From assembly GCA_963924565.1 (NCBI GenBank), contig OZ004613.1:27404001-27468000 (forward strand): a DNA stretch of 64,000 nucleotides, written 5' to 3'. The first letter of the stretch is position 1; the number at the start of each line of letters is the position of its first letter. Shown here piece by piece: positions 2,048 to 62,830 of this stretch. The notes beneath the pieces are model-generated. The model did no database searches. It saw only the letters and a list, made by a program, of their open reading frames with translations, and was not told the origin of the DNA. Origin of the DNA: Ascidiella aspersa (Eukaryota). The translations under genes and the position numbers were made by a program.

Positions 2048-5000
2048 ATGTCGGACAAACTACTCTCATTAGTATTTTACACTGCTTTATTTCGGATGGC
2101 AATGAGTGCAGGTAATTTGTGTGTTTTGTAGTAAAACAACAATAAGAAATAAGTGTTGGTGTTTTTTAAGGTTTTGCATCAAAAGAGCCATAAAAACTTG
2201 CGAAATATTCAAACTGCAACTTTTGAACTATTTATTTCGGGTATTTTTACTGCCTTTGAATTGGCGTTCTGTCGGAAAAGTAAATACTACAAATTTAGCT
2301 GAATTATTTCCTTGTCTAACTTTATCTTTTTAAGTTTGGAACAGCATTTTAAACATAGCTATTCTATTTAAACTTCTCCTAGGCTTTAAAAACATATATG
2401 GATAAAAAATGTGAGTTCTATGCAAAACAGCATTATGGGGGCTAATCGGTTAGTCATATAATAATTAACCAACGGTGACAAAAATCGTGCGATTTGTTAA
2501 TCGTAAACAAGTTTTTTTTATGCCATTGCATTTTGTTTTAGATAAGTTGCTAAACTGCAAAACGATGATTTAGTGAAACCAACAGTTTAGGAAACCCAAC
2601 CAATTAACTAGGAATATAATATACATTAAATATTTTTTAAGCATCAGCTCGCATTTAGGCTAATAAAATTGTTTGAACGAAAAATCCGACACTTTGCACT
2701 CTCAACGTGCGCCCTATCTTGGTTGTGTTATTGAACATTACTCAAGCCTATCGTAGCAAAACACCCACATCCTAATCAAGTGCTGATGTAGGCGGCAGTT
2801 TGCCTGCTGCAACGTTTGCGTTGTTGGTGGTTTTCAGGAAGGTATATGATGTCATTGCTGTCTCCGTGATAAGGTGTGTGGTGAAACGGTTCTCAAACTG
2901 TATAAAGCGGCGAACAAAATTATTAAGTGCGCTGTGAAATTTTTACTTCGGTAAATAGAATATTACAAACAAGAATGCAGACAAGCATTTTTCGTAAAAC
3001 AATAAAAACAAGCAGATTTTTTTTTAAATATTTAAAAAATAAAAATGAACGCTTTATTTAATCAATATTTTTTGTCATCAAATTTGGAATAAAGCATAAC
3101 CTGACTGTAAAATACTGTGGCGCTATGATAAAGTAAACCGATTTTATTAAGGTTCGGGTTCCGTCAACAAATATATTAGGTTCAGTTCCGCTTTGTTTCC
3201 TTAAATATTACGAAAACGGTTCAGGTTCGTCTACGGTTCGGGAAAAAAACTAGCCAAAAACCGGTTCATAAAGTTTCGGTTCGGGTTCGGTTCATCTTCC
3301 TGATATTAATGTATCTTGTTCCTTCAGTGTAGCGATTATAATTTGGCACATTTTTTGCTCGTTGTTGCAATGAACTTTTCATGTCACTTTTAAGATGCAT
3401 TTACGTTTTATACGCTGTTTTATCCCACGGTTTAAAAAATTGATAACATTGTTCTAAAACACTGTTGTTTTGTATCTGTTTATTTTAAGCACTTCCGGGT
3501 TCAATTTATTTTTACCGTCACGTTCAGGCAAGATGCCAATTCGTGCGGGCAACCGTGTTTACTGTTTTCTGTCCATCGGGATGAAGAAATGATAATAAAA
3601 AAGTCAATTTATTTTTACAGTCACGTTCAGGCAAGATGCCAATTCGTGCGGGCAACCGTGTTTACTGTTTTCTGTCCATCGGGATGAAGAAATGATAATA
3701 AAAAAGTCAATTTATTTTTACAGTCACGTGCAGGCAAGATGCCGAGTCCTTGTGGAGAATCGTGTTTACTGTTATCTGTCCATCGGGATGCAGGAATGAT
3801 GATAAAAAAGTTTGGGGAACTGATATTTACACTTCTGACTCTTCAATTTGCAAGGCGGCCATCCATGCCGGCGTCATCACAAGTAATAGTCAATCTCTTT
3901 ATTAATTCCGTTGCCATTTTAATCCTCATATCTCAGTGTTTCTCAACGACCTAATATTGGGTCGCCGTTTAAATTGGTTGGGCCGCGGGATACAGTAGTT
4001 TTTAAGGCTTAGATTGCTATGTATTGATTCTGATAAAGATTGCTTCAATACTTGAGAAAATTGCGGAAGTAACACGAAAATTTGGCTTATCTTATCAAAC
4101 TTGGAAGCTGTTTGTGCTAATGTGTTACGTGGTGGTCGCTTACAAATAGTTCAATGAAGAGAGGTGGTCGCCAAAATTTCGCTGTTAAACTTATGTATTT
4201 GGGTCGCCGCGTAAAAAGGTTAAAAAACACTGTAATATCTGGTACTTTGTTGTTCTTTCAAATACTCTTTCACCTTTTTGATACCGTGCTTCTATTTTGT
4301 TAAATTGTTGGCGTGTAACATTTCATTTTTTTCAGATAATGGAGGATCTGTTATTGTTCAAAAAGTCACTGGATTAAACAGTTACGAGGGAAGTGAAAGA
4401 AACGGAATAACCACCCGAGGGTGGAATGACTACTATGATGCGTTCAAAGTGTTTGGTAAGGCGTGATTCTGCGATGCTTTCCATTGCATCTGAACTTGTA
4501 TTTTGGGGGACAAAAATATAACTATTGTTACTTGTTTAGCAAAGCAAGCTCTACAGGTAAAATACACATCAGGGTTGTCAGTTTGGATTTTTTAAAGCCA
4601 AATTTGAAAACTAGGCTTCATTCAAACCACTTTAGATTTATTTATTTAAAAAAAAATTCAAACGAAATTTGTCGTTTTTAGGCTTTTTTGTTTCATTCAA
4701 AAATTAAAAAAAAAAAAAATTGCCAAGCAAAATTTACAAAAAAAATTGAAAAAAGAGAAATTCAATGTACCAGCATGACCATTTATTGGATTATCTATTT
4801 TCAGCAAAAACATAGGCTTGTTAGCGTTTGTAGCAGATTAGGCTTCTTTTGGCCTTTTTTAGGCAAGTTAAGCATTTTTTACTTTGGCCATCTGGCAACC
4901 ATGATACACATGTACAGCGTCAAACAATTAACACACATTGGTTCGGTCATGTGTGCGATATCTGGCTGGCTTAACACTTTACATTTGGGCAGCATAAACT

Positions 5001-5972
5001 TGCCGAATAATTTACTAATGCTTTAGTCATATGCGTTAGACAGCCGTCCCTTTCTGGTTTTGTAAATTCATTTGTTAATGACTATATTCTCATTTTAATG
5101 GCTGACACGCGTACCCAATGTGAAAAGCCAAATAATCAGTAGACTCTGTGCCGGTCATGCTGTACATCACATATTTGGAACGGTATAATTACATGTAAAA
5201 AAACTCTCTTTATTAAGATTAAGTTAATTTCTCCTTAATGCACCAGACCTAAAATTTGTCAAACATTTACAAAGTCATTGTTAACCCCCATAGGGTAAAG
5301 GTTATGTTTATATTAATAGCAGTAATAACTACAACAACTTCAACAACAAGGAGTACTATACGCCCAACGTCGACGATTTCATCAACAACCAGGCAATCAT
5401 CAACAAGGCAATCCACAACTAACTTGTCTCAATCCAATCAGACATTTTCGACTCAAGCAAGTGTACCCCAAAGCAACGCGCAGACTTTCAACTCCGTATC
5501 CTCTACTTTGCAGACCTTCAACGCCAGCCTTTTAACTTCCCAGCCAATCAACGATACGTCACAAAATGGCGGAAAAGTTGAGGGGAATTCCCTTGACACC
5601 ACGAGGCTGGCAGCAGGATTAGTCTCGGGTGCAGTCGCAATTGTACTGCTCATCTGTTTAGCTTTGCTTATTATAAGAAGACATAAAAGACAGAAGCTGT
5701 CCGCTAAAACCGAGACACCAATCTCCAATGCAACACAGAACCATAGGGAAGTCGTTAATAACGTGCTATACACCAGCTATGATAACGAACTTGCCACTGA
5801 GAATGAAAATACTTATCAAGTTGTAGATAATGTTGTTGAAAACGAAAATCACGCAGTGTACGAAGTTCCGGAAAGAACAAGCGAGAAAGAAGAAGTGGAC
5901 AATATTTTATACGGCGACACAAAAGTAAGCGACCAAAAGGAAGAAGTTGTCAACCCGCTGTATGACTTGTGA
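2048..5972 (+). CDS. LCCL-domain type I membrane receptor (signal-LCCL-S/T stalk-TM-NxxY-repeat tail), ~331 aa
   Basis: join(2048..2111,3724..3882,4336..4455,5320..5972); all introns GT-AG, phase 1. Signal [21 protein letters not shown] (in-frame ATGs also at 2030 and 2042). LCCL motif [69 protein letters not shown]. Tail NVLY, NTY, VYEVP, NILY, NPLYDL. Confidence 0.88.
3501..3706 (+). repeat. Two 103-bp tandem defective copies of the acceptor and 5' half of the LCCL exon
   Basis: Units start at 3501 and 3604; the functional copy starts at 3707. The dead copies carry TGC>TTC, TGC>TGA and a 1-bp deletion; the first has ccg in place of the cag acceptor. Confidence 0.9.
3934..4232. mobile_element. 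hAT-like MITE in intron 2 of the LCCL gene
   Basis: CAGTGTTTCTCAAC...GTTAAAAAACACTG termini; TSD tcatatct/taatatct. Confidence 0.75.
4570..4903. mobile_element. hAT-like MITE in intron 3 of the LCCL gene
   Basis: TIRs CAGGGTTGTCAG/CTGGCAACCATG; perfect 8-bp TSD atacacat. Confidence 0.85.
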
Positions 5973-6714
5973 AATGCCTCCTAACTATTAATCCAATAGG
6001 CGGAAATTGGCATTATACATAAAACAGCGTAAGGTGGAATATGTTTCAGTTGTTTGTTAATTTTTAAACTGATTTTTGTTGTTTTGTTATGCCTAAGTCA
6101 AACTACTTTTAGTAATATTGTGCCACTTTTAGAAATGATTAGTTTTGTAAAATTAAAAAATCATACGTTTTTTTAACATTTGGTTTGCAAGTTAGGGAGT
6201 GTTCTTTAGTTAATTGCGAACTCTGGTTGCTTGAAGTTCAATTGCTGTCAACATATCATGGTTACTCAAATGTACTGAATCACTACCATGGTCACTGAAA
6301 TGTACTATAATTTTGGAAATAAAGACAAAAGTCGATTTTAAGTGGTTAAGACATTCGAACAAGAACTGGCGATTCACGGAAATTATATAAAAATCCTTGT
6401 ACACTTCCATCAATGTAGACAACATAACACGACATTTTAGTCAATGATTTATGGATTTTAATTTTTAAGAGTCCCTAAAAATGTTGCAGAACCGCAAACG
6501 GGCAAACAAAATGTTAAATTTATAGATGACTGTTTTGTTTTAACTTTATTTAACCAGGTACGCCAACTTGATCTAGCCGTGGAGTACCAAGTAAGTTTAA
6601 CGTAAAACCCGAACAGAAATCTTTATGAACCGGGTAAAGGCTGATTTGGTCGGACTTGAACCGATTTTTTAAGGCTTTAAGACGTCGAACCGGAACTGAA
6701 TAAACAGTTTAAAG

Positions 6715-7150
6715 CAGGGCTGCGGAGTAGGTTAAAACAAACTCGAGTCCGAGTCCCGGATCCGACTCCGGCAAAATGTGCGATTTCGTCAAGTCCCGAG
6801 CCCGGCTGCCATTCTACAGTTTGTATTCCACCCATTTGCATAAAATCAGGTGAATGTTCAGCAATCCACTCATTGGCGTGTTATATAATTCATCCACCCA
6901 CAATACATATAGTTGGAAAATATTCCAGCATATGTTATTCCCCTTTACACTTTGCGGCCTTGTCGGTTTCGAATTTGGTACTGCGCATGTGCAATTCGAA
7001 TTGGGTACTCGCGTAGTATTACGTATAGTCTTACTCGAGTCCGTGTACCGAATGCGACTCAAGCAAAATAAACCGATTCCTTCAAGTCTTGAGTCCGAGT
7101 CCGAGTCCAGAGTCCAAGTCCATGTCTGGGCCCGGGTCCCGAGTTCAAAT
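6715..7150. mobile_element. hAT-like element remnant with GAGTCC subterminal repeats
   Basis: Starts CAGGGCTGCGGAGT; arrays of gagtcc; related right ends (..GCAGCCCTG) at 8408 and 63848. Confidence 0.55.
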
Positions 7151-7700: not shown

Positions 7701-7989
7701 GTTACATTACAGATTTGTATAAAGTGTACCCAAGTATAAACAGTCCTGCTATGAAGTTCTGTAACCCGAGATAAAACAATGTTTGTTAAGTTTTTCCAAT
7801 TCATATTTAGCGATAAATCGTTGAACATTTCGCTTGCTTCCTCGCAGTATCGCCTGCTCCGAAATATATGAGAAAACATTTTAGAGATGCCGTCATTATG
7901 TGATTACATAAAACAAAGGGTCACGAAATTTCGGCCCATGTCATCCCCAAATAATGTTATTTCAAGTTTTAAACGTAAAACTTTATTGG

Positions 7990-8780
7990 GTACAAATCCA
8001 AGCTAAATGTTTCATATGTGATATGATCCGCCGTGGTAAAGAGTCTGCAGGTGCATCTGGAGTTTGCTGGGTACTGGTTCGGAAACTTGGTCGAGTTAAT
8101 TAAACCTTCGGATCCTGGGTTTAGCTTAATCACTCGATTGCAGGACGCTGTGCAACACCAAATAAAAAGTACTACCCTCTTGTGATTTTTCTTCCTTGAA
8201 ATAAATTTAGATTGCTGCAGGTAAAAGGTAAAGCTTTTGTTTCATCGCTAAATGAACCCAAAACCGGTGAAAAATGTCATGGGGATTTGTATTCTTGTTA
8301 TTTTATTAGGTGGGAGTTAATTTGTAACAAGGGTGGGGGCTCGGGACTCGGGTAGTTTTACGCGGTCTTACTCGAGTCCCGAGCCCCGAGTCCGACTCGG
8401 CAGCCCTGACTCAAACAGTTGTAATATCCACAAAACAATAAGTGCTCCAGAGTGATGTAGCCTACGCAGCCAAACCAAATGGTGTTTTTCAGGTTTATTT
8501 ACTGTTTGTAGTTATGCTGGAAACGGATCTATCTCTTCTACCAATTGACGAAGGTTCATATTGTTAATGCAAAAGTTAGGCTGATTTCAACCCGGCGAAT
8601 GTAATAGATTCTTATAGTCAATTGGCATTTGGCAGAACTATGACTTCACATATCATTTATTGGTACATTCTTTAGCTCGAATGTTATTGAATGATATTAC
8701 AATCTCGCATCTACTGTACAAAATACCTTCGAACCTATAGGCAGAACATTTGGCGTGCTGAGATTATATTTTTTATGTAG
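7990..8780 (-). pseudogene. Truncated paralog of the CUB gene: first CUB exon plus intron and upstream remnants, leader exon missing
   Basis: From the acceptor at 8147 it reads ASCNRVIKLNPGSEGLINSTKFPNQYPANSRCTCRLFTTADHI and then degenerates. 8150-8330 resembles 14930-15150; ~8490-8770 resembles ~15930-16160. Confidence 0.75.
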
Positions 8781-9567: not shown

Positions 9568-12500
9568 TTAATTGTTGACGAGAAGAAATAGTGATAAAAG
9601 GATGAGTAGAACTTTGCAGATTTGAAATTCAGTTTGGTCAAGAGTTCCTATTGCGTTGTTTACACTCGTGGGAATAGATGTTGTTGAAATGTTACAGTCA
9701 GTTAACATTTTGTCGTGTGTTTCTTGGTAAACTGTAAAAGTAAAAAGGGCAATTGTTGTGAAAAATACGTCGTATAATCTTGTAAAGCCATCTGTGTGTT
9801 ATGCACGCACAACCAACCAAAACAAACGAATGAACGAACTCTGGTGCTTTTCAATTAACGCACTGTGTGTCTCATAAAAAAATAACAAGTCCATTCCTAA
9901 CCCTAAGCCATCAGCTGCTGTTAAGTCATTATTAGACCAGTTCACCTCCAAGCCAAATCAATGATATTAGAATAAAAACAAAAAATATTTAGGTCAACTA
10001 AAAAAATAACAGAAAAACAACAAGGAACAATCTATTTTTTTGTAAGAGATAAATATCTCAACTTTATAATAAATATCTCAACTTTCTATTATATCATAAT
10101 AGTTATAAATAAAACCACTTATTTCTAAACGTTTTGAATCAGGAATTAAGCCAATTCATTTTACCAAAACCAAATGAGTCAAGTCAAGTCATTTAAAATT
10201 AGTGACTCAATTTCACTTAATTTAGTCATTGACTTAAAGTCATTACAATACTGCATGAAGCTTCTTATACTATTGAAGTCATACATCTGGTTGCACCACG
10301 ATTGATTATTATCAACTGTCTGTAGACGAGAACCAACATACTGGGGGAGATTTGGTTAGAAATGCAACTGAGGATGCTTTTGGTCGGACAATTCGTTAAA
10401 ATTGTACCAGGAATGTATCTGACACTGAAACCATAAAAGTAAAACACTTGTAAGGTGTGCGGTGAATTATATAATGTTTCACCTATGGAATGATTATCGT
10501 CAAGAGCCCTCATTGGTATTGTTTGGTCGAGTTTTGTCGATACGTTGTACTTCATTCTGGTAGAAGATGTTTCAAAAGTACTTTCGTCGTTTGAGAAAGG
10601 CGCATTTGCTGCTTTGTAGGCTTGAGCAACTTTTCAATGCAACAAATGGAAACAATTCAGAAATCTCAACTTATTTATCATTTTTATTTTTATTTAGTTA
10701 AAATATTCTTATTTGTTTCCAACCATTATTGTACACGCATATTGTCAGTGTTGTAAACAAGTCATTTTGAAATGACTTAAGTCCCAGTCAAGTTATTTAT
10801 AAAATAACTTAAGTCCAAGTCAAGTCTTTTCGAATAAATAACAAGTCAAGTCCCAGTCCAAGTCATCAGTTGCTCAAGTCAAGTCCCAGTCAAGTCATAA
10901 CTAGAGCAAGTCAACTTCAAGTCATCTCCTTGTCATAAAAATAAAACGTTAAACTATTAGAAATTTCAAACTCGCATGATTATGAACAATAACTGAACTA
11001 AAAAATAAGAAAAACGGAACATATAGCAAGCAATTTGTTTTTTGTTGGACAAACAGCTCAATTTAAAAAAAAAATACTTGAAGAAATGCTTTATTTCAAC
11101 CCAAGTCATTTGTTCAAAAGACTTAAGTCAAGTCAAGTCATTTCAAAACAGTGACTTAAGTGCACTTAAGTCAAGTCATTACAACACGCATATTGGTGTT
11201 ACAATCAAAGAAATAATTCAGCGAATCCTGTTTTCAACTTAACACTTCACGTACCAGTTGCAGAATGTATCCGATGATTTTTAAATAGTCGAATTACTGC
11301 ACATTTGTTATATATGGTATATAGCAAAGTAGAGCCCAAATTTTAAGTTTCCCACTTTAATATTATAGTGAGATTGCAGTTGTTGGTTTAATAAAAAAGT
11401 TATTTAAGACATACCTGATTTGTTGCGTCCTTGTTCATAATTTTAACGACAAAATAAAACAAAACAACATCGTGCATATATCAATAAATTCCAACAAGTA
11501 GATTAATTATTATCACCTGTGAAAGCCACTCCACTAACGTTCCTATTGCTTGGTGTAGTTCGGTCGAGCTTTGTTGAAACATAATTCTTTATTCTGGGAG
11601 TAGGTGCTGTCAAAGTACTTCCATCGGGTGGGGACACTGGATTAAAGTAACAAAACAGGCACGTGTTTGGGGAACCAAGGTATGGGGGCTACAAGGAAAT
11701 TTCCATACCCCAATTTCCAATAGTGTCTCAGTGTTTTAAAAATAATTTAAGTATGCCAGGACTTTTAAGTATGCGAGGACTAATTGACCCGGTTAAAAAT
11801 ATTTTTTGTCAATTTTTCTTTCTCAAGTATCATGTTTAAACTCTCTATATTTTCGAAGATAATATAGTGTGTGGTTTATTGTGTTTATGTTTTGATACAT
11901 ATAGCGAACCCAAGTCTTAATTGCTTAGGGCCTCTGAAAAGCATGATCTGGCCCTGAAACATATTTCTCGCTTGGTTATGTCAAGCAACTTTACAAAGCA
12001 AAAACAACGTTACAGCGAAAGAAAGATTTCCTTTTTTTTCCATCAGTAAGTCATCGAAAATTTGATTGAAAATGTTAATTTAAGTTATTTTGCTTCTTTT
12101 CCACAAGGTTACAACTAACCAGTCAGTGGCGTAAGTCTCATTAATAAGACACACTCACCAGCTCATTACTAGACTTCAGTGTTGTAATGATTTGAGTGCA
12201 CTTAAGTCACTGTTTTTCAATCACTTAACTGAAGTCATTTGGGAAAAATGACTTGCGTTGACTTATGTCTTTCGGACGAATGACTTGGGTTAAATCACAG
12301 TGATATTTGAAAGATTTTTTTGTAGGTATATATCCTAATTTTTCTAAATGAAACGGTAAGCTTGCTATATGTTGCGATTTTGTTATTTTTCTGAGTATAG
12401 GTATTGTGGCAATCGAGTTAGTTTATCTCTTCTGGTAATTTAACGCGTAAATTTCGTAACAAGGACTTGACTTGGAATTGACGAGCTATAATTATGACTT

Positions 12501-15500: not shown

Positions 15501-15624
15501 TTGTGGACGTTACTATTATTTTGTTTAGAAGATTGTTATAGGCAATAAAAATAAAGATATAGGTGCTACCTTCACATTTCACAAGCAAAATTAGGAAAAT
15601 GGAAAGCAATAATTGATTTTCCAT
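9568..15624 (-). CDS. Predicted GPI-anchored protein with two CUB domains and an S/T-rich stalk, ~393 aa
   Basis: complement(join(9568..9731,10483..10629,11517..11636,12613..12785,13839..14013,14125..14297,14754..14928,15570..15624)). Signal MENQLLLSIFLILLVKCEG. CUB motifs INSPNYPNPFP..CTY..C.NDYISVYDG..CG..YFKSD..GF.IRY. Two homologous stalk exons (STKLDRTTP/STKLDQTIP). C-terminus NNAIGTLDQTEFQICKVLLILLSLFLLVNN* looks like a GPI signal. The stalk exons are less certain than the CUB exons. Confidence 0.8.
10746..11188. mobile_element. hAT-like MITE of the AAGTC/GACTT-repeat family
   Basis: CAGTGTTGTAA...TTACAACACG termini; many aagtc repeats; TSD catattgt/catattgg. Confidence 0.8.
12177..12602. 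mobile_element. AAGTC/GACTT-family hAT-like MITE (opposite orientation)
   Basis: CAGTGTTGTAA...TTACAACACTG; degenerate TSD ctagactt/ctacactc. Confidence 0.8.
12932..13710 (+). repeat. Nested direct repeats around a SINE in a CUB gene intron
   Basis: ~145-bp block at 12932-13078 recurs at ~13491-13635 with further partial copies; inner ~40-bp and ~26-bp blocks are also duplicated. Confidence 0.75.
13210..13283 (+). mobile_element. tRNA-derived SINE or tRNA-like element
   Basis: A-box TAGCTCAGTTGG, B-box GAGTTCGAACTC, acceptor stem GCCTGCA/TGCAGGC. Non-canonical anticodon loop and 6-nt T-loop. Diverged minus-strand copies at ~32852-32918, ~45720-45780 and ~57972-58037. Confidence 0.75.
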
Positions 15625-18794: not shown

Positions 18795-18950
18795 GTTGTA
18801 CAGTAAAACTCTGAGGAAAAATTCAATCACTTGGGACAACTCTAAATCATTAAAAGACTACTTGATCTAACAATAATCTTTTGAAAAGTATTATATATAA
18901 AAGACCAATAATATAATCTATAAAAAACTACCAAAAAAGTATCCTGGATG
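18795..18950 (+). pseudogene. Possible decayed cytochrome c fragment
   Basis: YSKTLRKNSITWDNSKSLKDYL, then PKKYPG ~60 bp later, resembles the cytochrome c C-terminal half; no CxxCH found. Confidence 0.3.
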
Positions 18951-42099: not shown

Positions 42100-42332
42100 T
42101 CTACAGTGACCAAAACAAGACATGTTTGCGAATTAATTTTCGAAGACTTAAGATACTCGGACCAGGTGACTGTGGCTTGACATTTTGTTTCTAAGCAAAC
42201 AGTATGGAAATCATACGATTTTATAAATATTGTGTTTAAATGACGCTAAATTCGTACAATTATTTTGTAAATGAAGGTGCAATATGATAGAATATAGTTG
42301 TAAAGAGCTGATTGCAGTTGTCAAAGCAAGAG

Positions 42333-52653: not shown

Positions 52654-54970
52654 TGCACGTTGTATTTGCCTTTCAATATGACGAAAGCAATTAAAGCCAT
52701 AGATAATATTTGAAATAAACTTCTTACTTTATTAATTGTCTTCAAATCAACTCTTTCCTCGATAAAGGGATGCGCGGACAGTATTTGCCAAATATTTGTG
52801 ATTATTGTCTTATTTTAGTCTTGTTTTGTCATATTTTAGTCCAACACTTCCTGCTTTTGTGATGCAGCAGAGTTCAATAAAGTTATGCTTAACTGAACTG
52901 CTTGACAGGCTATTGCCCGGTTTATATCAATCAAAAAATCATGACTACATCTGTTCCACAACCTTTTACGCTCCTTCATTATTCACGCAACTATGCGTAA
53001 CTAAACCTACCTACGCTTTCTGTATACGTGTCTACAAGTGCGTGCCGACAATAATAATAAGTTAATGCCTTTACATTGATTTAGTTTGTTGTTTATAAAT
53101 TTCCCCATTAGTCTACCGATGTATACCTTTTTAAAAAAGTAACTGCAGGTTCCCCATTTTCGTCGGCATTCTCGCATATACTCTATAAATGCAATCATTA
53201 AAAGGAAAATGGAAGACGATGTACAAAGTTTATTAAAAAAACGTCTCTTACGTAATTTTGTGTAATTGGTGAAGTGAAAACAGGGATCCTTCGGAATAAA
53301 GTTCAAGCCACTTCACATAACGTTTATTCGCGACCCATTGCACAAACTTTAGTTGTACCATTCTTTAAATGCTCAGAGTAAATCTAAGACTTACCAATTC
53401 TTGTTTTTTATAGCGCATTTCGAGTGTTGCTTAATATTTTATTGATTACAGATCATAACCTTCCAAAAAGTAAATAATAGAGTAGTTGAATTAAGTAATT
53501 CTCACGAGTAACGTCACTTGAAAGGTCTGGAACCACTGACATAAGTCTGTAGCAGTTTTGTAATGACTTAAGGCAATGACTTGACTTAAACTGTTTTAAA
53601 TGACTTGAATTGACTTTAAGTCTTTTCAAATCACTCAGGTCGGAATGAACTGTTTTCCTTAAGTATTTTTTTTAAATTGAGCTATTTCTGAAAGTCTTTG
53701 CACATAAAACAAATATTGTCTTTTTCTTACTTTTTAGTTTATTTATTGTTCATAATCGTACTATAGTTTAAAAGTTATAATAGTTTAACGTTTTATTTTT
53801 ATGACAAGGACGTGACTTGAAGTTGACTTGCTCTAATTATGACTTGACTGGGATTATTGTGGCTTGATTATTTATTCAAAAAGACTTGCCTTGGACTTCA
53901 GTTATTTTAAAATGACGTGTTTACCACACTGGTCTGTAGTATGGTATTACTAATCAAGTAACAAAATTCCTGGCCATAATTTGACATCGCAGTAGCATAC
54001 CTCGATTTATTGTCACTATTAATAGCACAAAAACGCAAATGACAACGTCACAGGCACTAATGCCACAAAGACAGCACAAAAAACACAAAGCCAACATAGA
54101 GTAGGTGGTGAGGCAAAAGAGTTGGAGTGGGTGTTGAGTAATTATTTTTAGCCGCCGGCCGCATGAGGAACTTAAAGTGCTGTGGCGGGCCGAGTCAAAA
54201 ATAGGATGTGGTATACACGCAATATGACGTCATACGAAATCAAAAAAGCTACCCAATTTGTTATTACGTTTGGAGTTGTGCAAAAATTTGCAATTTAATT
54301 CGAATTTAAAGTAGGTCACGAGACATCGTGCGAAGCGCGAAACAATTGCGGCTATGTTTGTTTTAAAGTGCAAAATTTAATTTAGTTTTGGGGTTATGTG
54401 AAGCATTAAGCAGAGGCAAAAAATGTACATTGCTTGATATATTGGCGTTTGTAGGGCTCGTTGACCCAAAAGTTTAGATTAAAATACGTAAAAATTCGGT
54501 ACAAAAACGTACCATGTTTTCGCGTAAAGCGGGAAAACAATTTTCGTTATAGTATTTAAATCAGGCTAAAAATCGAATTTGACGGGGTCTTGACTAAATC
54601 CGTCAACTTGCCCTTATTTTCGCTTAGCTTATGTATTTTAAGCAAAATAGGCCGCAGGCCGAATTAAAATGCTTAGCGGGCCGTGCCGTATGTTGCCGCA
54701 ATCTGGTCTACAGTAACCAAAACAAGACATGTTTGCGATTTCCTTTAATTTTCGAAGACTTAAGATACTCGGACCAGGTGACGACTGTGGCTTGACATTT
54801 TGTTTCTAAGCAAACAGTATAGAAATCATACGATTTTATAAATATTGTGTTTAAATGACGCTAAATTTGTACAATTATTTTGTAAATGAAGGTGCAATAT
54901 GATAGAATATAGTTCTGCAATATGATAGAATACAGTTGTAAAGAGCTGATTCCAGTTGGCAAAGCAAGAG

Positions 54971-57900
54971 TTAAAAGTGATTTTCGTACACTGGCGTGTT
55001 GTTTTGACTTGACTCGACATTGGCCGGGATGGTTACATATTCCACTTCTGCCTTGGAGGGCAGTTGTGGGTTCATTTCGACGTAATCCTCATCTTTGGAA
55101 TGAACTGGAAAAACTGGATTGGGTTGAATGTAACCATCCTCTTCGTCAACATTTGACACTTTCCCTGTTAAAAATGCTCATATTGTTCGATTGTGTCTTT
55201 ATTTGGTAAGCTTGCAAACACTAGAAAAAGGGTCGTGAAAACCAAAAGGTTGGGAACAATCGCTCACTCATGTTGCTGTATGCCTTGACCATGGACCAAT
55301 GTTCTCATTCGTGGGTCAGAGTTACAACCCGTATGATTATATTTTTTGTTGATATTTAGACTACTGAATGACATATTGTTGCTTAAACAAATATTTTGCA
55401 TTTAGATAACTTATACTTTCGATATAGACATAGTTGTGGGGTTCTGATATTGCCAATGGATTTTCATTTGTAGTATCTTCTACTTGTTGGATTAATATCT
55501 GCTTCAGGCGACATCTGACACAAAGAACACAGTTCAGTATTAGTGCAAGATACTTATCGTCAGGGTTGGATCCAAGCAGTGGAAGGCATGAGGCCATTCT
55601 TCCCCTCCAAACTGTATTTTTGTCCATTTAAACTAGGCAAATGCATTTTTTCTTATGAGTTCAAATTATTGTCATACAATGTCTTGGCCCAATTTAATTA
55701 AATCGTTAAACCCAAAAGGCATCGTTCGTCCCCTCGCACCCTTCAAAATGGCAATTGGCATTTTAAACAATGTTTTTTCGCTGTGCGCGAATCGATACAT
55801 CTTTGTAGTGTAACTTTTTTATCGACAGTAACACCTCTGAAACCTTAAACTTTAACGAAATAAACGAACTTTAGGTTAATTTTCATGACGTTACGTTTAC
55901 ATGATATTTCGTGATTTCACATTTTAAAGTAACTTTTTGAAGTCATTTCGAAAAAAACTTTACGGTCCACCCCCAAAAAAAATCCTAGATCCGCACGGCT
56001 TATCGGTAATAAAAACATAGGGCAACTTAATTTTTTTTTTTATTAAACCACAGAGGAGAATTCATCAGCTTATCCAGACATAGGGATTGGGATATTACTA
56101 TAACTCTATAAAGCCGCTAAGTACACTTGCGTCACGTAAGGTACTTACCCTCTACAGCGCCACCACCAAAGGGCAGCAGAGATGCACAGGATGATAAGTA
56201 GTATTGCGGATATCGCAGTTATTACTTCAACGTTCGAACGTTCATTGATGTGTGTGTTTGCTTCTGAAAATTCGGTAAAAACAAAACAAGATATACGTGA
56301 ATTAAAGGTATAGTGGCCCTGAAGACAAATATGCAAATCTGATGACGTCACTGACAGTTTATACGTGATAAAAAAAATCAGTAAAACTAAAATTATAAAT
56401 CTACAAACTAAAAAAATGTTAAATTTGTTCATTCTGTAGGCTATGTGATGTTATGGACTCCAGCCATAAGCCCGAAATAAGAACAACATCAACATCAAAA
56501 GGAAACAGTTTGGAATAAGACCAAAATATGTCTAACACCTTATAGCCGTAATACCTTCTATATCGAAATAAGGCCAAAATTTGGACATTGAGTCCTTATT
56601 CGGATGACTTTAGGACGTATTCCGGGTGGGTTTATGTCTTATTCAGACGATTTAGATCTTATGTTTTCATTATTGCGTACCGGTATTTGGCTTCATTATG
56701 TCGCTGATCTTAGTGCTATCATATTGTAGATTTTTCTGGTTTAGGATTGTTGCTTTTTAGGTATTATTGTGTTCCCGATGTGAATTACTATTGTTTTCCT
56801 AAATATTATAATTCTAAGCACCGTCTTATTACTATTAGCGGTTGCCCCAATACCTGTCAAAGTTTGAACAGTTGAAGCCACAGACGCTGCGTTGGTTTGA
56901 TTGATGAGCGGACGTGACCCGCTAGCTGTCGGCAACGAAGGAGCTAGAACTTAAACATAGCTGGTCTTAGAAAAACGAGGCCCAGTCAAAAGAGCAACCT
57001 GGATGTGTAGAATAAGAATACATCTCCACGCCCCTATTACACGTAAATGACGACAATGACTTCAAATGGGAGCAAATATTCGTTGGACTTTCCTGTTTTG
57101 TCAAAGTCAATCATTTATACATTCTATTCATTTAAAAGAGAAATATATTTTACCACAAAACAAGGTATCATCAGTGTCTTTATTTGAATGAATCTATCAT
57201 GTCAAAATATGGCATTTTAAACGGACATTGTAATTATAGGAACAACGTAATGAAACGAGAAAATTACAATTTATTGCATTACAAAGAAAAATAAACTAAC
57301 TTTTGGAACAGGCGACAAAATGTTAAGTGCGACTTTCACGTAAAATAGAATTGCATTTGGTTGGCGCAAGTCAGCAAATTATATAAGTCTTGCGTTTTAG
57401 AGGAAATTAGGAAATACGAGGACATAATTCAGTCTTTATTAGTCCTTTGTTAAATTGACACGTTCTCTATTGTCTAAATAATTTTTTTTACGTTTAGGCG
57501 GCGAAATATTTGACTTAATTCCCAGTCAAGACATTCGTAAAATATCTGAAGTACAAGTCAAGTCTTTTCGAATAGATAACAAGTCAAATCTCAGTCCAAG
57601 GTAAGTCCCAGTAAATTCACAATTAGACCAAGTCGACTTAAGTCAAGCTTTTGTCATAGAAATAAACTTTTAAGTTAAAACTGGTAAATTCGTCATATTA
57701 TGAGCAATGATTTAAGCAAAAAAAATACTTAATGCAAGATATAGCAAGAAAGATGTTTTATGCCCGAAAATTAAGGTGAATTACTCAATGTTTGAAAAAC
57801 CTGCTTGATGGAACACTTGTCCAAAAGAATTAAGTCAAGTCAGACATTTAAAATCTGCGACTTAAGTGCACTTTATTTCATTGACTTAAGTAAATACAAT

Positions 57901-60355
57901 ACTGACAGTATCACAACCCAAATATGCGACTACAAACGTAGTTTAAAAGCATTTTTAGAGAACATTTTTAGAGAAGTTCGAACTCACGACCTCCGTCTAT
58001 ACCGGGACCGTCGCTCTACTAACTGAGCAACACAGGCTTAGAGAGGGGCGGGTCGAGAAACAACATGACACCAATACTTGATAAAATAAGGTTTTTAAAA
58101 TTGCGCTTACCCTTACTGCAAGTGTAAGTGACGCTCAAGTATTTGTTCGTCGTTGAGCAATTGTTGCCAAATACATCATTCGTTGCGCTTAGCGTGCAGC
58201 TTGATTTACCGTCGCACATCGATCTCACTTTGTTCAATACACTTGAAGTGCATAGTACTCCGAAATGAGTTGTACCAGAAATCGGACAGCTGAAATCGGA
58301 ATAGTACAATTCTCATCATGTTGAAAATGTATATTGTATCCCCTGGTAAGAATATCAAAGCCCATACAGAAGTATAGGTATCATTCTGAACCTTTCGAAT
58401 ATCTCTTTATTGATTTTCAACATATTGTTTTTTTTGGAACGTTCAAACCGATCCCTACTTCTGTATCGGCTTTGATATTCTTACTGCGTCTTACCACAAC
58501 CTCAGTCATTATTCTAGGAATATATTTAGGGCAAATTTATAAACGCATAGTTTTGGTGCTGTCGCTACAGATATTGCATAGGTGGTAAAAACATAATTAT
58601 TTTGTTTTGATTTTGTCTTACCATCGACACGCTTTAAAATCAACGGTAACGGTAAGCATATGTTAACTACTTCGCGATGATCGTCTCGACCAATAATTCC
58701 CAAACTGTGTTTGTAAGTTCGGAAAGAGAGTATTTGTATTACGAATAGGCATACACGCAAACATTTTAGACTTAAAAACGTACTATTCATTACATGATAA
58801 TAGTTTCATTACACAACAATAGTTTAAGGAAGATTGTAAAATAATTCTCTTTTTTGGTCTGTTAAAATTGTGCTGCGAAACAGTTTTTTTTAGTGTGCCG
58901 CGAGCCAAATAAGTTTGGGAACCTAGACTCTGGTTATTTATCTTTGGTTTCGCAACGGAGTTAAGTCTTTCCTTACATTAATGTATCTTTTCGTCCATAA
59001 CTTGCACTCGTCACGTTAATATGATGATCTTGTAGACACTTGATTGTTAAAGTGGAACCCTCGCAAATGTTCAAGGTGTTTTGTCCTGCATTGGTAAAAT
59101 AGATAAAGCATAAAAAACAGTGTTTTGTGACTGTAGTCAATGATTTTGTTGAGGTGCACCTATAAGCTATTTTTTTAAAAGACTTGGTTTTCGTAAATTA
59201 GATTAATTATTATTTAACTTGAGTCATATGCGCAAGTGACTTGATAATTAAGTGCATTAACTGAATATATTCAGTAAAGTAGGTTATTAAGTTAATTACA
59301 ATGTATAAAAAATATTAAGCTATTTCTTTCGTTATTGATGTTTGCTATGACAAGTATTGCTCAGAGTGGACAGTGTTCACCGGGTTTGAAAGTGTCCTAT
59401 TTATTTTAAGTGTCAACGACGGTATTCGGATTTGCCTTGTTAAATGACTTATGCCCGAACTTAATTTATTCATGCCACAAATAACAACATGTAATGGATA
59501 TTAAAATGGCATACATATTTTAATTACCACTGTTGTTTCAGCATGGTAGAAGTAGGTTCAGGCTGTGATGTGACAAAATAAATCTTTAAAATAGCACAAT
59601 CATTTCTTAATATTAAAGTTGAATGGTGATCAAATATAAACTCGTGTGAACTACGCATGTTTAACAATAGCTCGTGTAGACCAATATGTTACACCTTAAT
59701 CATACATATTTACATCAAATTGATGTTGCCATCACATTACTAAACAGTCTAGGTCCAATCGCATACCACTTGTCTTAAATCGTCGCCAGCTGTTGTATCG
59801 CATTAATTACCGCGCCGCTCTTATTGATAAAATTGCAATTAACATTTCAAAATCTCAACCGAAGCAAGCGCATATTGCAGCAGCCATATTTCTTATAACT
59901 ACGTCAGGTTATGCGCGGCGCTGCTTTGCATTAGATCACCTTCCAGAAAGCCGTGGTTTACTTCTGATAGCATGTTATGTTTTTAAACTTTTCTTTAATC
60001 TGCACCGCTTTCTTTCATATTATATTTTTTACTTTTTTATCAATTTTATTATTATTTTGCTTTGTACAGTCAAACTTTGATGTGTATGGATTTTACTTCA
60101 CTTGTAGGAACGGGCCATCCCTATAGGCAAAATATATATTCCTTTATAAAAAATCTCGTTTTACTCGGGGGTTTTAAACTTCGAACTCTATTTTCCTTAT
60201 AACGAGGAACGCAAACCTACTGTCGAATCTAAAGGAGTTTGTCATACAAAACAGTTATGTTAATAGTCAAGATACAAATTACCTGCAGCAAACTTTGCAA
60301 TCCAAAGTAGATTAACCCAAACAAATATCATGAATAGTTGCTTTAAAATCTTCAT
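54971..60355 (-). CDS. SUEL/RBL type I membrane receptor copy 3, ~309 aa
   Basis: complement(join(54971..55164,55417..55514,56149..56263,56681..56752,56854..56943,58111..58289,58977..59085,60283..60355)). Loop CPISGTTHFGVLC. Frame intact; last donor is GTATAAGT. Confidence 0.83.
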
Positions 60356-61499
60356 TACGTGGCCAATGCACCAGTAGTTTGATATGATTAAAACAGTAAA
60401 AGTACTTTTTTATAAAAACTGAATAACTCAATTTCATTTAAATATAATAGTTCTCTTCTTTTAAATAGGCTGTGCTCAGTGCTTTTTACTATACTTATTT
60501 GCCAAGAAGTTGATTAAGATAGACCTTATTATGCAGCCTTATTACCTTATCGTAAATCTTGTGCCTATAGTAGGGGTTTGACGCAGTATTTCCAATACGC
60601 CTTAGCAATAAGGAAATCATGACCACGTCAAACTGCCTATTCAACCTTTCACTTCCCCTTATTGTTCGTGCTGCTTTCTAATTCCCCATCATGTACTGTA
60701 TTAATCTTATTTCCGCATTACTTTACACCTGACAACACTTACAGGTGTAAACCTTTTGATCAAGTATAAGAAATGTTCAGCTTTAAAACTTTAGCACGTG
60801 GATACAGTCTGAATCAGTCTTCTGTAAATATTGATAACGCAAAAGATATTCAAACTCACCTACATAGGATTTACCGTATCTTTCTACAATATTTTAGTTT
60901 TTATCTCTCAGTGTTATTCGTTCAAGTTTTTCATAAATAAACCGATCAGATATCTGTAAAAATCAAATGCAATACAATCGACTTAAGGGGTTTGTATATT
61001 GCAACCGTTTCATGATAAAATTGGCTCAGTAAGAAAGGGTTCAGCCAATCAACTTTAATGACATTTTCAACCGCGGCATGTTTCAATAAGTGTCACATCA
61101 GTTTGCTCAAACGTTTCCATACGAGAAAAAAACTAATGATCGCCTGTAGTTGATTATAGAACGTAATTTTATTCAAGTCTGTTTGACTAAGTTTTGGAAA
61201 TTCGGCTAACAAAATGATATGGTGCCCCTCACCCCTTGGTGCAGTGTTAAGCACGTGTTTATTTTGCTTTATGGTTGATCCAGACCTGTTTCATACCTTT
61301 TCCCACGATGTACCTATAGTGGTATTTTAAACTCCCTGCGTAACACCAGTTGGTACCCGGTTTTAGAGAAATGTATAACCTCAACCTATTTTTTTTGAAA
61401 CAAAAAGGTAAATTCGATCACAAAAAGAAATCACAAATAATTAGTCAAACAGAGTTGAATAAAATTACGTTTTATAATCAACTACAGGCGATCATTAGT

Positions 61500-62039
61500 A
61501 TATCACTGCTCTTGATTTACGTCGCAAGTGAAGATTCCTTATAGGCTTCTTTCACTCTTTCGACAAGTTTAGACATGAATAAGGTTTCTTAGAAACGGTG
61601 ACACACTGAATTACTAACAGCTTTAATTTAGCAAGGTATAGCACATGTCGCAAAACAATACACAGAAATAAATCGAACCCACATTTGCGATACAGAAGTC
61701 GCACACAGGATCATTGATTCTCATAAATTTAAAGCGAGCCATGCGTTTGTTCGACAGTCAAGCTGTTGCAGTATAGTTCGCAATTAGAGGCCTTAATACT
61801 TTGGTGCCCTATATATGTAATTGAGGGTCAAGTTGTGATCAATTTTTTTGGAAATAATTCTCATACCTTTAAACATTTATTGCGAGGTTTAAGATGATAC
61901 TTGAGAAAGAAAAATAAGCAAAGTATTATTTCAACCTTGCTAATTTGAGGTCTGAGTCGTTTGCCTATAGTTGTTTCATTAAACAACGATTAGTCTATAA
62001 GGAACCTTCACTTGCGCCGTAAATCAAGAGCAGTGATAT
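61500..62039. mobile_element. Non-autonomous DNA transposon with ~45-bp TIRs; right TIR truncated in units 1 and 2
   Basis: atatcactgctcttgatttacgtcgcaagtgaagattccttata (from 61500) is the reverse complement of tataaggaaccttcacttgcgccgtaaatcaagagcagtgatat (to 62039). Confidence 0.8.
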
Positions 62040-62486: not shown

Positions 62487-62679
62487 TTGATAATAAATTA
62501 TAAAGCCAAAAGGTCGAGCAGATCGAAATCATCTATCATCTTCAGTTAATGTGACTGAGAAGTAAATCATAGCATCGCTTATAAAATGGGAGACGCAATT
62601 GTTATCATTTTTGAGAAAAGTCTTAATCAAGATGATGTCGATCTACTCGACGTTTTTGGCTTTGAGATTCATTATTAAG
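62487..62679. mobile_element. Foldback MITE (same family as 45066-45260)
   Basis: aaagccaaaaggtcgagcagatcga...tcgatctactcgacgtttttggcttt. Confidence 0.6.
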
Positions 62680-62763
62680 CTAAATTTACAGTTCCGTGTA
62701 TAGTATACCCATGTAAAGGTGTTAGTTTTAGAGTATCGGGAAAGCACTGCTATCCCTTGAGCA

Positions 62764-62830
62764 ATGAAGATTTCCGAGGATATTTTGTTCCTTTGCATTC
62801 TGCTAATGTGGATTACAACATTACGTGCAG
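62764..62830 (+). CDS. Leader (signal-peptide) exon of a further gene, probably continuing beyond the window
   Basis: MKISEDILFLCILLMWITTLRA followed by a phase-1 donor GCAG|gtgatt. Same length (67 bp) and donor context as the leader exon of LCCL copy 3. No downstream exon identified. Confidence 0.55.

What the first reader, a model, noticed from the sequence alone, without database searches (positions are those of the whole stretch)
2048..62830. Candidate undescribed innate-recognition receptor complex: LCCL and RBL receptors with tyrosine-docking tails beside a GPI-anchored CUB protein
Seen: about ten genes or gene relics share one plan (phase-1 leader exon, recognition module, S/T stalk, then TM+tail or GPI exon) but use unrelated ectodomains (LCCL, SUEL/RBL, CUB). 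Known: LCCL occurs in Limulus factor C, cochlin and LPS-binding CRISPLD2; RBLs are soluble pattern-recognition lectins in fish, sea urchins and ascidians; CUB domains mediate protein interactions. I do not recognise single-LCCL or single-RBL type I receptors with kinase-less multi-tyrosine tails as described families. Inference: a birth-and-death receptor cluster organised like vertebrate leukocyte receptor complexes but built from non-Ig domains, acting in microbe, self/non-self or gamete recognition.
Basis: partly seen in the sequence, partly recalled or inferred. Interest (0 to 1): 0.9.

Follow-up and report, generated by a model that had tools for sequence, protein, structure and literature searches.

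The report
Modular LCCL and lectin receptor cluster
A sea-squirt chromosome segment holds a tandem cluster of small membrane-receptor genes that combine unrelated outer domains (LCCL, rhamnose-binding lectin and, just outside the window, WxxW) with two kinds of enzyme-free, tyrosine-motif inner tails; the genes look real and lineage-specific, but no transcript or function has been shown yet.

Summary
Pfam confirms the LCCL, SUEL/RBL and CUB exons. Seven gene models pass an exon-by-exon check: AG/GT at every boundary and an open frame throughout. They are two LCCL receptors (330 and 367 aa), three RBL receptors (285-288 aa), a two-CUB protein with a GPI-type C-terminus (304 aa), and an LCCL-only gene. 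A 12.6-kb LCCL+RBL cassette is triplicated; two of its three LCCL copies are frameshifted.

The cluster runs about 80 kb past the window. There, RBL heads sit on the "LCCL-type" tail, and a four-repeat WxxW head sits on the "RBL-type" membrane and tail exons. Heads and tails have therefore been re-paired at phase-1 exon borders.

Tail A carries 3-5 conserved NxxY motifs. Tail B carries YxxP, YxxM, VxYxxI and YxN. Neither tail has a homologue in 5.8 billion proteins, and no paper in the searched library describes such receptors.

The kind is known, however. DCBLD1/2 are LCCL-bearing, kinase-less, tyrosine-motif scaffold receptors, and EVA-1/EVA1C are RBL-bearing type I receptors.

The one RNA run available (about 6% of it read) gave no reads on any exon. 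An immune or self-recognition role remains conjecture. This scan has already reported similar lectin receptors with swappable tails elsewhere in this genome.

The parts
2048..5972 (+). Gene A: LCCL receptor with tail A, 330 aa. Exons: 2048-2111 (leader), 3724-3882 (LCCL first half), 4336-4455 (LCCL second half), 5323-5972 (Ser/Thr stalk, TM, tail with 3 NxxY).
   Evidence: Pfam LCCL 1.6e-17 and 2e-4. Splice sites read. Frame and AG/GT check. Tail alignment A1.
3500..3723 (+). About 110-bp tandem triplication: the end of the intron plus the first ~85 nt of gene A's LCCL exon. The two upstream copies are degenerate pseudo-exons.
   Evidence: Read directly. Repeated ORF fragments.
7972..8241 (-). 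Isolated relic of a CUB first-half exon, downstream of the CUB gene's last exon.
   Evidence: Pfam CUB 0.0071, below cut-off. phmmer 6.6e-33 against the CUB1 first half.
9568..15624 (-). Two-CUB protein with a GPI-type C-terminus, 304 aa. Exons: 15624-15570 (leader), 14928-14754 and 14297-14125 (CUB1), 14013-13839 and 12785-12613 (CUB2), 9731-9568 (short Ser/Thr linker, small-residue site, spacer, 13-residue hydrophobic end).
   Evidence: Pfam CUB 2e-9 to 3e-10. Sequences read. Frame check. The GPI signal was judged by eye only.
16835..17994 (+). Headless inverted partial copy of the CUB gene: a leader exon (in 16835-17026) and a GPI-type last exon (17854-17994), with no CUB exon between them.
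   Evidence: Inverted repeat 15326-16182 vs 17200-16324, 84% identity. ORFs.
21272..23242 (-). LCCL-only gene. Exons: leader 23242-23173, LCCL 22169-22008 and 21391-21272. The LCCL is intact with good splice sites, but no stalk, TM or tail exon was found downstream. It is either secreted or truncated.
   Evidence: Pfam LCCL 1.8e-15.. No tail-A hit nearby.
24317..62011 (.). Three tandem copies of a 12.6-kb cassette: 24317-36893, 36895-49761, 49763-62011. Each holds one LCCL/tail-A gene and one RBL/tail-B gene. The RBL halves of units 1 and 3 are closest to each other; the LCCL halves of units 2 and 3 are closest to each other.
   Evidence: Self-blastn, 91-98.6% identity with staggered blocks.
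25059..27239 (-). Unit 1 LCCL receptor with tail A, intact, 367 aa. Exons: 27239-27137, 26965-26807, 26188-26069, 25780-25059. The tail has 8 Tyr, 5 of them in NxxY.
   Evidence: Pfam LCCL 1.6e-18.. Matches cochlin LCCL 1JBI at 6e-8.
29801..35233 (-). Unit 1 RBL receptor with tail B, intact, 288 aa. Exons: 35233-35161 (leader), 33970-33862 and 33173-32992 (RBL), 31884-31789 (stalk), 31089-30975 (TM, juxtamembrane CxxC), 30342-30245 and 29994-29801 (tail: YxxI, YxxP, YxxM, VxYxxI, YxN).
   Evidence: Pfam SUEL_Lectin 1.4e-11.. Matches PDB rhamnose-binding lectins 5H4S at 1.8e-30 and CSL3 at 6.5e-16.
37659..39857 (-). Unit 2 LCCL gene, damaged. A 2-nt deletion in LCCL exon 1 stays in frame only if a second acceptor 8 nt downstream is used. 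A 16-nt deletion in the tail shifts the frame after the first NxxY.
   Evidence: Three-way alignments. Split ORFs 37623-38384 and 37672-37851.
42333..48252 (-). Unit 2 RBL receptor with tail B, intact, 285 aa. It keeps the canonical GDPC and KYL motifs. Its head is about 10% diverged from units 1 and 3.
   Evidence: Pfam SUEL_Lectin 1.4e-13..
50524..52710 (-). Unit 3 LCCL gene, a pseudogene. A 2-nt deletion in the stalk leads to a stop. The tail has a TAA and further 1-2-nt deletions. The LCCL exons themselves are intact.
   Evidence: Split ORFs.
54971..60355 (-). Unit 3 RBL receptor with tail B, intact, 287 aa. It is identical to unit 1 in the head except for one loop between the third and fourth Cys (58289-58240).
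62764..62830 (+). Leader exon (phase 1) of the next LCCL/tail-A gene. Its LCCL exons (window-equivalent 65046-66027) and tail exon (67432-68142) lie outside the window.
   Evidence: Leader scan. phmmer map. Pfam LCCL 1.2e-12 on L003.

Best explanation
This is a lineage-specific, tandemly duplicating cluster of genes for small type I membrane glycoproteins. Each gene is built from interchangeable exon modules.

The plan is a signal peptide, one compact ligand-binding head, a mucin-like Ser/Thr stalk, one TM helix and a tail without any catalytic domain. The head is LCCL or rhamnose-binding lectin; just outside the window one gene has four WxxW repeats.

There are two tail types. Tail A is a single exon holding stalk, TM and a cytoplasmic part with 3-5 conserved hydrophobic-x-N-x-x-Y motifs. 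Tail B is spread over three exons, with a juxtamembrane CxxC followed by YxxP, YxxM, VxYxxI and YxN.

Shown:
- the domains
- the intact, phase-consistent gene models
- the triplication and the decayed copies
- the re-pairing of heads and tails at phase-1 borders
- conservation of the tail motifs across paralogues that share only 26-40% identity

Inferred: the proteins sit on the cell surface and bind a glycan or protein ligand through the head. They then act through the tail, either by recruiting PTB/SH2 adaptors after tyrosine phosphorylation or by NPxY/YxxPhi-type internalisation. Which ligands, which cells and which process are unknown.

The two-CUB GPI-type gene is a neighbour. No link to the receptors is demonstrated.
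For: - Pfam domain hits.
- Seven models have AG/GT at every junction and open frames.
- The tail-A exons stay open for 237-243 codons in five paralogues of 26-40% identity, in 35%-GC DNA. At this AT content stop codons are common, so I take this as evidence of coding constraint.
- NxxY occurs 3-5 times per tail, with binomial p from 3e-2 to 4e-4 per tail, and at aligned positions.
- The TM and cytoplasmic exons of the RBL genes give pN/pS of 0.22-0.35, against 0.66 for the head.
- Tail A occurs at eight places, all within C7:27.409-27.544 Mb, plus one weak hit on another contig. It sits behind LCCL and RBL heads.
- The tail-B TM exon occurs four times in the genome, behind three RBL heads and one WxxW head.
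- All head-to-tail borders are phase 1.
- The RBL half-domains match solved rhamnose-binding lectins. All heads keep the CEG and KYL positions. I mapped those positions from memory onto the sugar-contacting Glu and Lys of latrophilin RBL named in PMC2430599.
Against: - No RNA support. Run X3 gave zero depth on every exon of 25100-31099. Only about 6% of the run was read, and the tissue is unknown.
- No homologue of either tail in other species, so conservation across species cannot be shown.
- Two of the five LCCL/tail-A genes are frameshifted.
- Unit 1's LCCL leader lost the ATG used in units 2 and 3 through an 11-nt deletion, and now relies on an upstream in-frame ATG.
- The tyrosine motifs are short. 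Their reading as PTB, SH2 or endocytic sites is by resemblance only.
- The domains are split across exons and I did not search or fold joined models, so no full-domain fold was tested.
Confidence: 0.6

Rival explanations
1. One reading: an innate-immune or self/non-self (allorecognition, gamete) receptor complex. It would be analogous to the vertebrate leukocyte or NK receptor complexes, with polymorphic heads sensing microbes or conspecific tissue and tails giving activating or inhibitory signals.
For: - Lectin-type heads closest to soluble rhamnose-binding lectins.
- Tandem expansion with pseudogenes.
- One ITIM-like VxYxxI together with YxxM and YxN in tail B.
- A sharply divergent loop in otherwise identical RBL copies: 8 of 27 nt plus a 3-nt indel.
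- Other lectin receptor families with tyrosine tails were noted in this genome by the same scan.
Against: - No expression data at all.
- Head pN/pS is 0.66, not above 1.
- The TM helices have no charged residue, so nothing suggests pairing with an activating adaptor.
- Polymorphism could not be assessed, because the variant contigs carry paralogue letters.
- The family is small: about 9 tail-A and 4 tail-B genes.
Confidence: 0.25
2. Developmental or adhesive co-receptors in the manner of DCBLD1/2 and EVA-1/EVA1C. The small heads would bind endogenous matrix or guidance proteins, and the tails would scaffold adaptors. There would be no role in defence.
For: - DCBLD1/2 combine LCCL with a kinase-less, multi-tyrosine tail.
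- EVA-1/C21orf63 is a single-pass protein with RBL heads. The authors of PMC2430599 argue that receptor-borne RBLs may bind non-sugar ligands.
- Adhesion-GPCR genes lie inside the same cluster.
Against: - Not orthologues. There is a single head domain only, no FA58C, and no CUB in the same gene.
- There is 0 or 1 YxxP per tail.
- The FAM176/EVA1 match is noise tied to the TM helix, seen in 2 of 7 members.
- Developmental receptors are usually conserved and single-copy, whereas these are local, duplicated and decaying.
Confidence: 0.12
3. Largely dead DNA: a recently amplified array whose copies are unexpressed or decaying. Intact frames would simply reflect the youth of the duplicates.
For: - No RNA reads.
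- Two frameshifted LCCL copies, a headless CUB relic and isolated exon relics.
- The unit-1 RBL loop has become strongly hydrophobic.
Against: - Old paralogues (26-40% identity) outside the triplication still have open 237-243-codon tail exons with aligned motifs and matching splice phases.
- The tail exons show pN/pS of 0.22-0.35.
- All three RBL genes and gene A are intact.
Confidence: 0.1

Closest known systems
DCBLD1/DCBLD2 (ESDN), vertebrate discoidin-CUB-LCCL scaffold receptors
   Same: A type I membrane protein with an LCCL domain outside and a kinase-less tail. The tail's repeated, conserved tyrosine motifs recruit an adaptor: YxxP binds the CRK/CRKL SH2 domain after Fyn/Abl phosphorylation (PMC6029619).
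   Different: DCBLD carries CUB, LCCL and FA58C in one ectodomain, with seven or eight YxxP motifs. Here LCCL is the only head domain, the CUB domains are in a separate GPI-type gene, and the repeated motif is NxxY with 0-1 YxxP. There is no tail homology, and these genes are tandemly duplicated rather than conserved orthologues.
EVA-1 / EVA1C (C21orf63), and the RBL domains of latrophilins and PKD1-like proteins
   Same: SUEL/RBL domains displayed on membrane receptors. EVA-1 is single-pass with RBL heads (PMC2430599).
   Different: EVA-1 has two RBL domains and a conserved tail. Here there is one RBL, closer in sequence to soluble egg and serum lectins (5H4S at 1.8e-30, CSL3) than to latrophilin RBL (about 3e-3). 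The tails are unrelated, and the FAM176 hit is noise.
Soluble rhamnose-binding lectins (CSL3, SUEL, ascidian RBLs)
   Same: Same domain, with the YGR, (D)PC and KYL signature region. They are the best structural matches.
   Different: Those are secreted tandem-domain lectins. Here a single domain is tethered by a stalk, a TM helix and a signalling-type tail.
Vertebrate leukocyte and NK receptor gene complexes, and transmembrane adaptors such as LAT, SIT and SCIMP
   Same: Clustered, duplicating receptor genes with tyrosine-motif tails and pseudogenes. The juxtamembrane CxxC followed by multi-tyrosine docking sites in tail B resembles LAT-type adaptors. Language-model look-alikes include SCIMP and LIME1, but all score below 0.9.
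   Different: The heads are neither Ig nor C-type lectin. No charged TM residue or partner adaptor is evident. The resemblance lies in organisation and motif type only.
NPxY-tail receptors (LDLR/LRP family, CED-1/Draper/MEGF10, integrin beta tails)
   Same: Hydrophobic-x-N-x-x-Y motifs, often repeated, read by PTB-domain adaptors for endocytosis or engulfment (established knowledge, not tested here).
   Different: Most motifs here are NxLY or NxVY rather than NPxY, and the ectodomains are unrelated.

Membership tests
LCCL domain (PF03815) | Match to the family profile above the curated cut-off | tested here: met
   First-half exons score 57-67 bits against a cut-off of 22.6. Second halves score 16-22 bits, continuing profile positions 59-96. 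Match to cochlin LCCL 1JBI at 6e-8.
SUEL/rhamnose-binding lectin domain (PF02140) | Match to the family profile; YGR, (D)PC and KYL signature; 8-Cys pattern | tested here: met
   Second-half exons score 45-54 bits against a cut-off of 31.4. First halves cover profile positions 1-21. YGR and KYL are present in all copies. DPC is kept in unit 2 and in the outside genes but is NNC in units 1 and 3. PDB lectin matches.
CUB domain (PF00431) | Match to the family profile above cut-off, with both halves present | tested here: met
   Four half-exons score 35-41 bits against a cut-off of 21.4, covering profile positions 5-55 and 54-110 twice.
GPI-anchored protein | N-terminal signal peptide plus a C-terminal small-residue site, a hydrophilic spacer and a hydrophobic end, with no cytoplasmic tail | tested here: inconclusive
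   The last exon, 9731-9568, ends with small residues (NNAIG), a spacer of about 10 residues and a 13-residue hydrophobic stretch, followed by NN and the stop. No GPI predictor or experiment was available.
DCBLD1/2 family | CUB + LCCL + FA58C ectodomain in one polypeptide | tested here: not met
   Only the two LCCL exons lie between leader and stalk. The CUB domains are in a separate gene on the other strand relative to gene A.
DCBLD1/2 family | Seven or eight conserved intracellular YxxP motifs | tested here: not met
   Tail A has 0-1 YxxP, and NxxY dominates. Tail B has one YxxP.
EVA-1/EVA1C family | Two RBL domains plus a TM helix plus a conserved EVA1/FAM176 C-terminal region | tested here: not met
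   The window genes have one RBL each. FAM176 reaches an E-value of only 0.017-0.03 in 2 of 7 tails, among other matches driven by the TM helix.
ITIM-bearing inhibitory receptors | (I/V/L/S)xYxx(I/V/L) in the tail, and recruitment of SHP phosphatases | tested here: inconclusive
   One VxYxxI is conserved in all three tail-B copies. Binding is not testable with these tools.
PTB-ligand / NPxY-type tails | Hydrophobic-x-N-P-x-Y motif, and binding by a PTB adaptor | tested here: inconclusive
   There are 3-5 NxxY per tail A at aligned positions. Some are NPxY-like (NPVY, NPLY, NPIY), most are NxLY. Binding was not tested.

The most novel reading that the evidence does not exclude
The locus is an invertebrate-chordate counterpart of the vertebrate leukocyte/NK receptor complexes, built without Ig or C-type lectin domains. 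It would be a rapidly turning-over recognition locus in which LCCL, RBL and WxxW heads are shuffled by exon exchange onto one PTB-type and one SH2-type signalling tail. It would serve blood-cell recognition of microbes or of non-self tissue or gametes.
Probability: 0.18. Interest if true: 0.8.

Novelty: new variant of a known kind. Interest (0 to 1): 0.5.

Why it matters
If these genes are expressed, they add two unrecorded receptor architectures: a single LCCL, or a single rhamnose-binding lectin domain, on a stalk with a tyrosine-motif tail. They also give a clean genomic example of exon shuffling. The same tail exon sits behind unrelated heads, and the same head type sits on two unrelated tails, all within 150 kb.

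LCCL has no agreed ligand. A family of minimal LCCL receptors would be a convenient handle for finding one.

For comparative immunology, the cluster is one more candidate among the lineage-specific receptor expansions of sea squirts, the closest relatives of vertebrates. Its value depends on expression and ligand data that are still missing.

Tried and rejected
- Homologues of tail A. I searched the whole exon, a 7-member profile and the cytoplasmic part alone against 5.8 billion proteins. Nothing was found. The tail-B exons are too short for that tool's length window.
- Full HMMER search with the LCCL first-half exon. It returned 2330 hits, but the 150 listed are all multi-LCCL proteins ranked by summed score. 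Only two have a C-terminal TM helix and none resembles tail A or B. The search therefore says nothing about single-LCCL receptors elsewhere.
- RNA support. One RNA run exists for the species, and about 6% of it was read. There was no read on any exon of 25100-31099. Reads landed only on two high-copy repeats. The leader, RBL and stalk exons of the RBL gene (31789-35233) were outside the 6-kb limit and were not tested.
- Polymorphism from the two DNA contig runs. Rejected, because variant letters such as 26927 and 26931, and the 30376-30421 joint, are those of units 2 and 3. This is paralogue cross-laying, not allelic variation.
- EVA1/FAM176 kinship of tail A. Rejected.
- ESM Atlas look-alikes of the tail. 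All score below 0.9, so they are leads only.
- Positive selection on the RBL head. Not supported; pN/pS is 0.66.
- A donor template for the divergent RBL loop. None exists within 174 kb.
- Steps left out. Spliced models were searched exon by exon only. The frame check carried only the split codons across junctions. For that reason no structure prediction of the split LCCL or RBL domains was run. No complex prediction was run, because no physical binding is claimed.

Full report
**What the window is.** The window is AT-rich eukaryotic DNA (32-38% GC) with no N runs. It is C7:27404001-27468000 of a 308.6-Mb assembly. Earlier notes of this scan call the organism a sea squirt. I did not verify the species independently.

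**Checking the observation.**
  - LCCL is always split into two exons. First halves score 57-67 bits against a cut-off of 22.6. Second halves continue the profile from position 59 to 96.
  - SUEL/rhamnose-binding lectin (RBL) is also split in two.
  - Four CUB half-exons make two full CUB domains.
  - The LCCL half matches cochlin's solved LCCL.
  - The RBL half matches solved rhamnose-binding lectins far better than latrophilin RBL (1.8e-30 against about 3e-3).
- I read the splice sites from the sequence and found the leader exons with a scan for ATG, a hydrophobic core and a phase-1 donor.
- An exon-by-exon check found AG/GT at every junction and an open frame throughout for seven models. 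Only the split codons were carried over junctions, and no joined sequence was printed or searched. The models are:
  - gene A, LCCL with tail A, 330 aa
  - a two-CUB protein with a GPI-type end, 304 aa
  - an LCCL-only gene
  - the unit-1 LCCL receptor, 367 aa
  - three RBL receptors, 288, 285 and 287 aa
All head-to-stalk borders are phase 1.

**The triplication.**
- Self-comparison shows that six of the "about ten" genes are one 12.6-kb cassette, holding one LCCL gene and one RBL gene, present three times (24317-36893, 36895-49761, 49763-62011).
- Identity is mosaic. The RBL halves of units 1 and 3 are 96-98.6% alike. The LCCL halves of units 2 and 3 are closest to each other. This fits unequal crossing-over in a tandem array.
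- The three RBL genes are intact. Of the LCCL genes only unit 1 is.
  - Unit 2 has a 2-nt deletion in the first LCCL exon, which stays in frame only if a second acceptor 8 nt downstream is used. It also has a 16-nt deletion that shifts the tail frame after its first NxxY.
  - Unit 3 has a 2-nt deletion in the stalk that runs into a stop, plus further lesions.
  - Unit 1 has lost, through an 11-nt deletion, the start codon used in units 2 and 3. It uses an upstream in-frame ATG instead.

**The other genes in the window.**
- The CUB gene has its own kind of leader, two CUB domains and a last exon at 9731-9568. That exon consists of a short Ser/Thr linker, small residues, a spacer and a hydrophobic end. 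This fits a GPI signal, but I judged it by eye only.
- An inverted partial copy (leader in 16835-17026, GPI-type exon 17854-17994) has no CUB exons. An isolated CUB half-exon sits at 7972-8241.
- The gene at 21-23 kb has a leader and an intact LCCL but no stalk, TM or tail exon.

**Beyond the window.**
- Searching the whole genome with the tail-A exon found eight places, all within C7:27.409-27.544 Mb, and one weak hit elsewhere.
- I fetched 110 kb of flanks and mapped them with the window's own exons and Pfam. The cluster continues as follows (window-equivalent coordinates):
  - two RBL genes carrying tail A (94.8-97.9 kb and 136.5-139.9 kb)
  - a duplicated RBL pair followed by a truncated tail A (106.9-111.8 kb)
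  - a minus-strand gene with four WxxW repeats (PF13330, 2.8e-20), each with a stalk exon, ending in a TM exon and tail like those of the RBL/tail-B genes (74.6-82.6 kb)
- The tail-B TM exon occurs only four times in the genome: three RBL genes and this WxxW gene.
- Splice phases fit in the outside genes too.
- So heads (LCCL, RBL, WxxW) and tails (A, B) have been re-paired. This is stronger evidence for a modular receptor family than anything inside the window.
- Two adhesion-GPCR-like genes also lie in the cluster.

**The tails.**
- Five tail-A paralogues share only 26-40% identity, yet each keeps an open exon of 237-243 codons. They also share a common layout: a stalk of 31-53% Ser+Thr, an uncharged TM helix, a basic stop-transfer and 3-5 hydrophobic-x-N-x-x-Y motifs at aligned positions.
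- Tail B has a juxtamembrane CxxC, then YxxI, YxxP, YxxM, VxYxxI and YxN. It is conserved in all three copies, with one to three amino-acid changes between any two copies across the TM, cytoplasmic and tail exons.
- Between units, the TM and cytoplasmic exons give pN/pS of 0.22-0.35 and the RBL head 0.66. This indicates constraint on the tail and no sign of positive selection on the head as a whole.
- The exception is one loop, where units 1 and 3 differ at 8 of 27 nt plus a 3-nt indel in an otherwise identical head. No donor sequence lies within 174 kb.

**Relatives elsewhere.**
- Three searches with tail A found nothing: the whole exon, a profile, and the cytoplasmic part alone.
- The exhaustive HMMER search with the LCCL half-exon returned 2330 LCCL proteins. 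The 150 listed are all multi-LCCL proteins, and none has these tails. It is uninformative about single-LCCL receptors.
- A weak FAM176/EVA1 hit on tail A proved to be noise tied to the TM helix.
- ESM Atlas look-alikes are single-pass adaptors such as SCIMP, but all score below 0.9.
- No paper in the library links LCCL or membrane-bound RBL receptors to ascidians.

**Expression.** One RNA run of the species was available. I laid it on 25100-31099, which covers the whole unit-1 LCCL gene and the TM, cytoplasmic and tail exons of the RBL gene. It gave zero depth on every exon. Reads fell only on two high-copy repeats. Only about 6% of the run was read and the tissue is unknown, so this is absence of support, not evidence of silence. 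The two DNA contig runs hold the locus, but their variant letters are those of the paralogous units, so they say nothing about alleles.

**Comparison with known systems.**
  - DCBLD1/2 are vertebrate type I receptors with CUB, LCCL and FA58C domains. Their kinase-less tail carries seven or eight YxxP motifs that bind CRK/CRKL after Fyn/Abl phosphorylation (PMC6029619).
  - EVA-1/C21orf63 is a single-pass protein with two RBL domains. RBL also heads latrophilins and PKD1-like proteins (PMC2430599).
- The present genes work like these in outline but are not members. They have a single head domain, different motifs, no tail homology, and local duplication and decay.
- The organisation resembles vertebrate leukocyte/NK receptor complexes. 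The same scan has already described C-type-lectin and lectin-Ig receptor families with swappable tyrosine tails elsewhere in this genome.

**Verdict.**
A modular, birth-and-death receptor cluster is well founded. "Innate recognition", a functional link to the CUB gene, and expression are not.
- Novelty: a new variant of a known kind.
- Interest: 0.5.

Noticed in passing
L004 (window-equivalent 74596-82648, minus strand): A gene with four tandem Mucin2_WxxW repeats (PF13330, 2.8e-20), each followed by a Ser/Thr stalk exon. It ends in a TM exon 64% identical to that of the RBL/tail-B genes and a tail-B-like exon, making a third head type in the same family. More WxxW exons lie at 101065-101400 and 123776-124291 (+). 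The genome has at least 60 WxxW exon matches.
   Followed up: partly
L007/L008 (window-equivalent 112365-116411, +) and L010/L011 (143133-145706, -): Two adhesion-GPCR-like genes in inverted orientation inside the receptor cluster (GPS motif 5e-10, 7tm_2 6e-11).
   Followed up: partly
window 33173-33125, 58289-58240, 46291-46250 (minus strand): The loop between the third and fourth Cys of the RBL domain differs at 8 of 27 nt, plus a 3-nt indel, between units 1 and 3, whose heads are otherwise identical. Unit 1's version is strongly hydrophobic. No donor sequence lies within 174 kb. Unit 1 also carries a direct 13-nt repeat that duplicates the acceptor site.
   Followed up: partly
window 3500-3723 (+): An approximately 110-bp tandem triplication of the intron end plus the first part of gene A's LCCL exon. 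It leaves two degenerate pseudo-exons upstream of the real one.
   Followed up: partly
window 27127-27249, 39724-39857, 52577-52710 (minus strand): An 11-nt deletion in unit 1 removes the start codon used by the LCCL genes of units 2 and 3. It brings an upstream ATG into frame, giving a longer leader with two hydrophobic stretches.
   Followed up: partly
window 27300-27700 and 28100-28700; also 10884-11187: High-copy repeats: contig word depth is 18,000-140,000 against about 80-120 for the flanks. These are the only places where RNA reads landed, and nearly all of those reads run on into unlike sequence. They are probably transposon fragments expressed elsewhere.
   Followed up: no
window 13209-13284 (+): ARAGORN calls a tRNA-Ala (GGC) inside the intron between the two halves of the second CUB domain (CUB2, 13839-12785). 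tRNA-like stretches also follow the RBL second exon (about 32880-32950). These are likely tRNA-derived SINEs.
   Followed up: no
G000, genome-wide: LCCL is strongly expanded, with at least 111 exon matches. There are dense arrays at C7:9.38-9.42 Mb, C1:36.49-36.51 Mb, C4:10.03-10.08 Mb and C4:8.44-8.53 Mb, spaced about 1.3 kb apart. The spacing suggests multi-LCCL repeat proteins like the top database hits.
   Followed up: no
window 15326-16182 vs 16324-17200: An 84%-identical inverted repeat places two CUB-type leader exons back to back. The plus-strand copy leads only to a GPI-type exon (17854-17994).
   Followed up: partly
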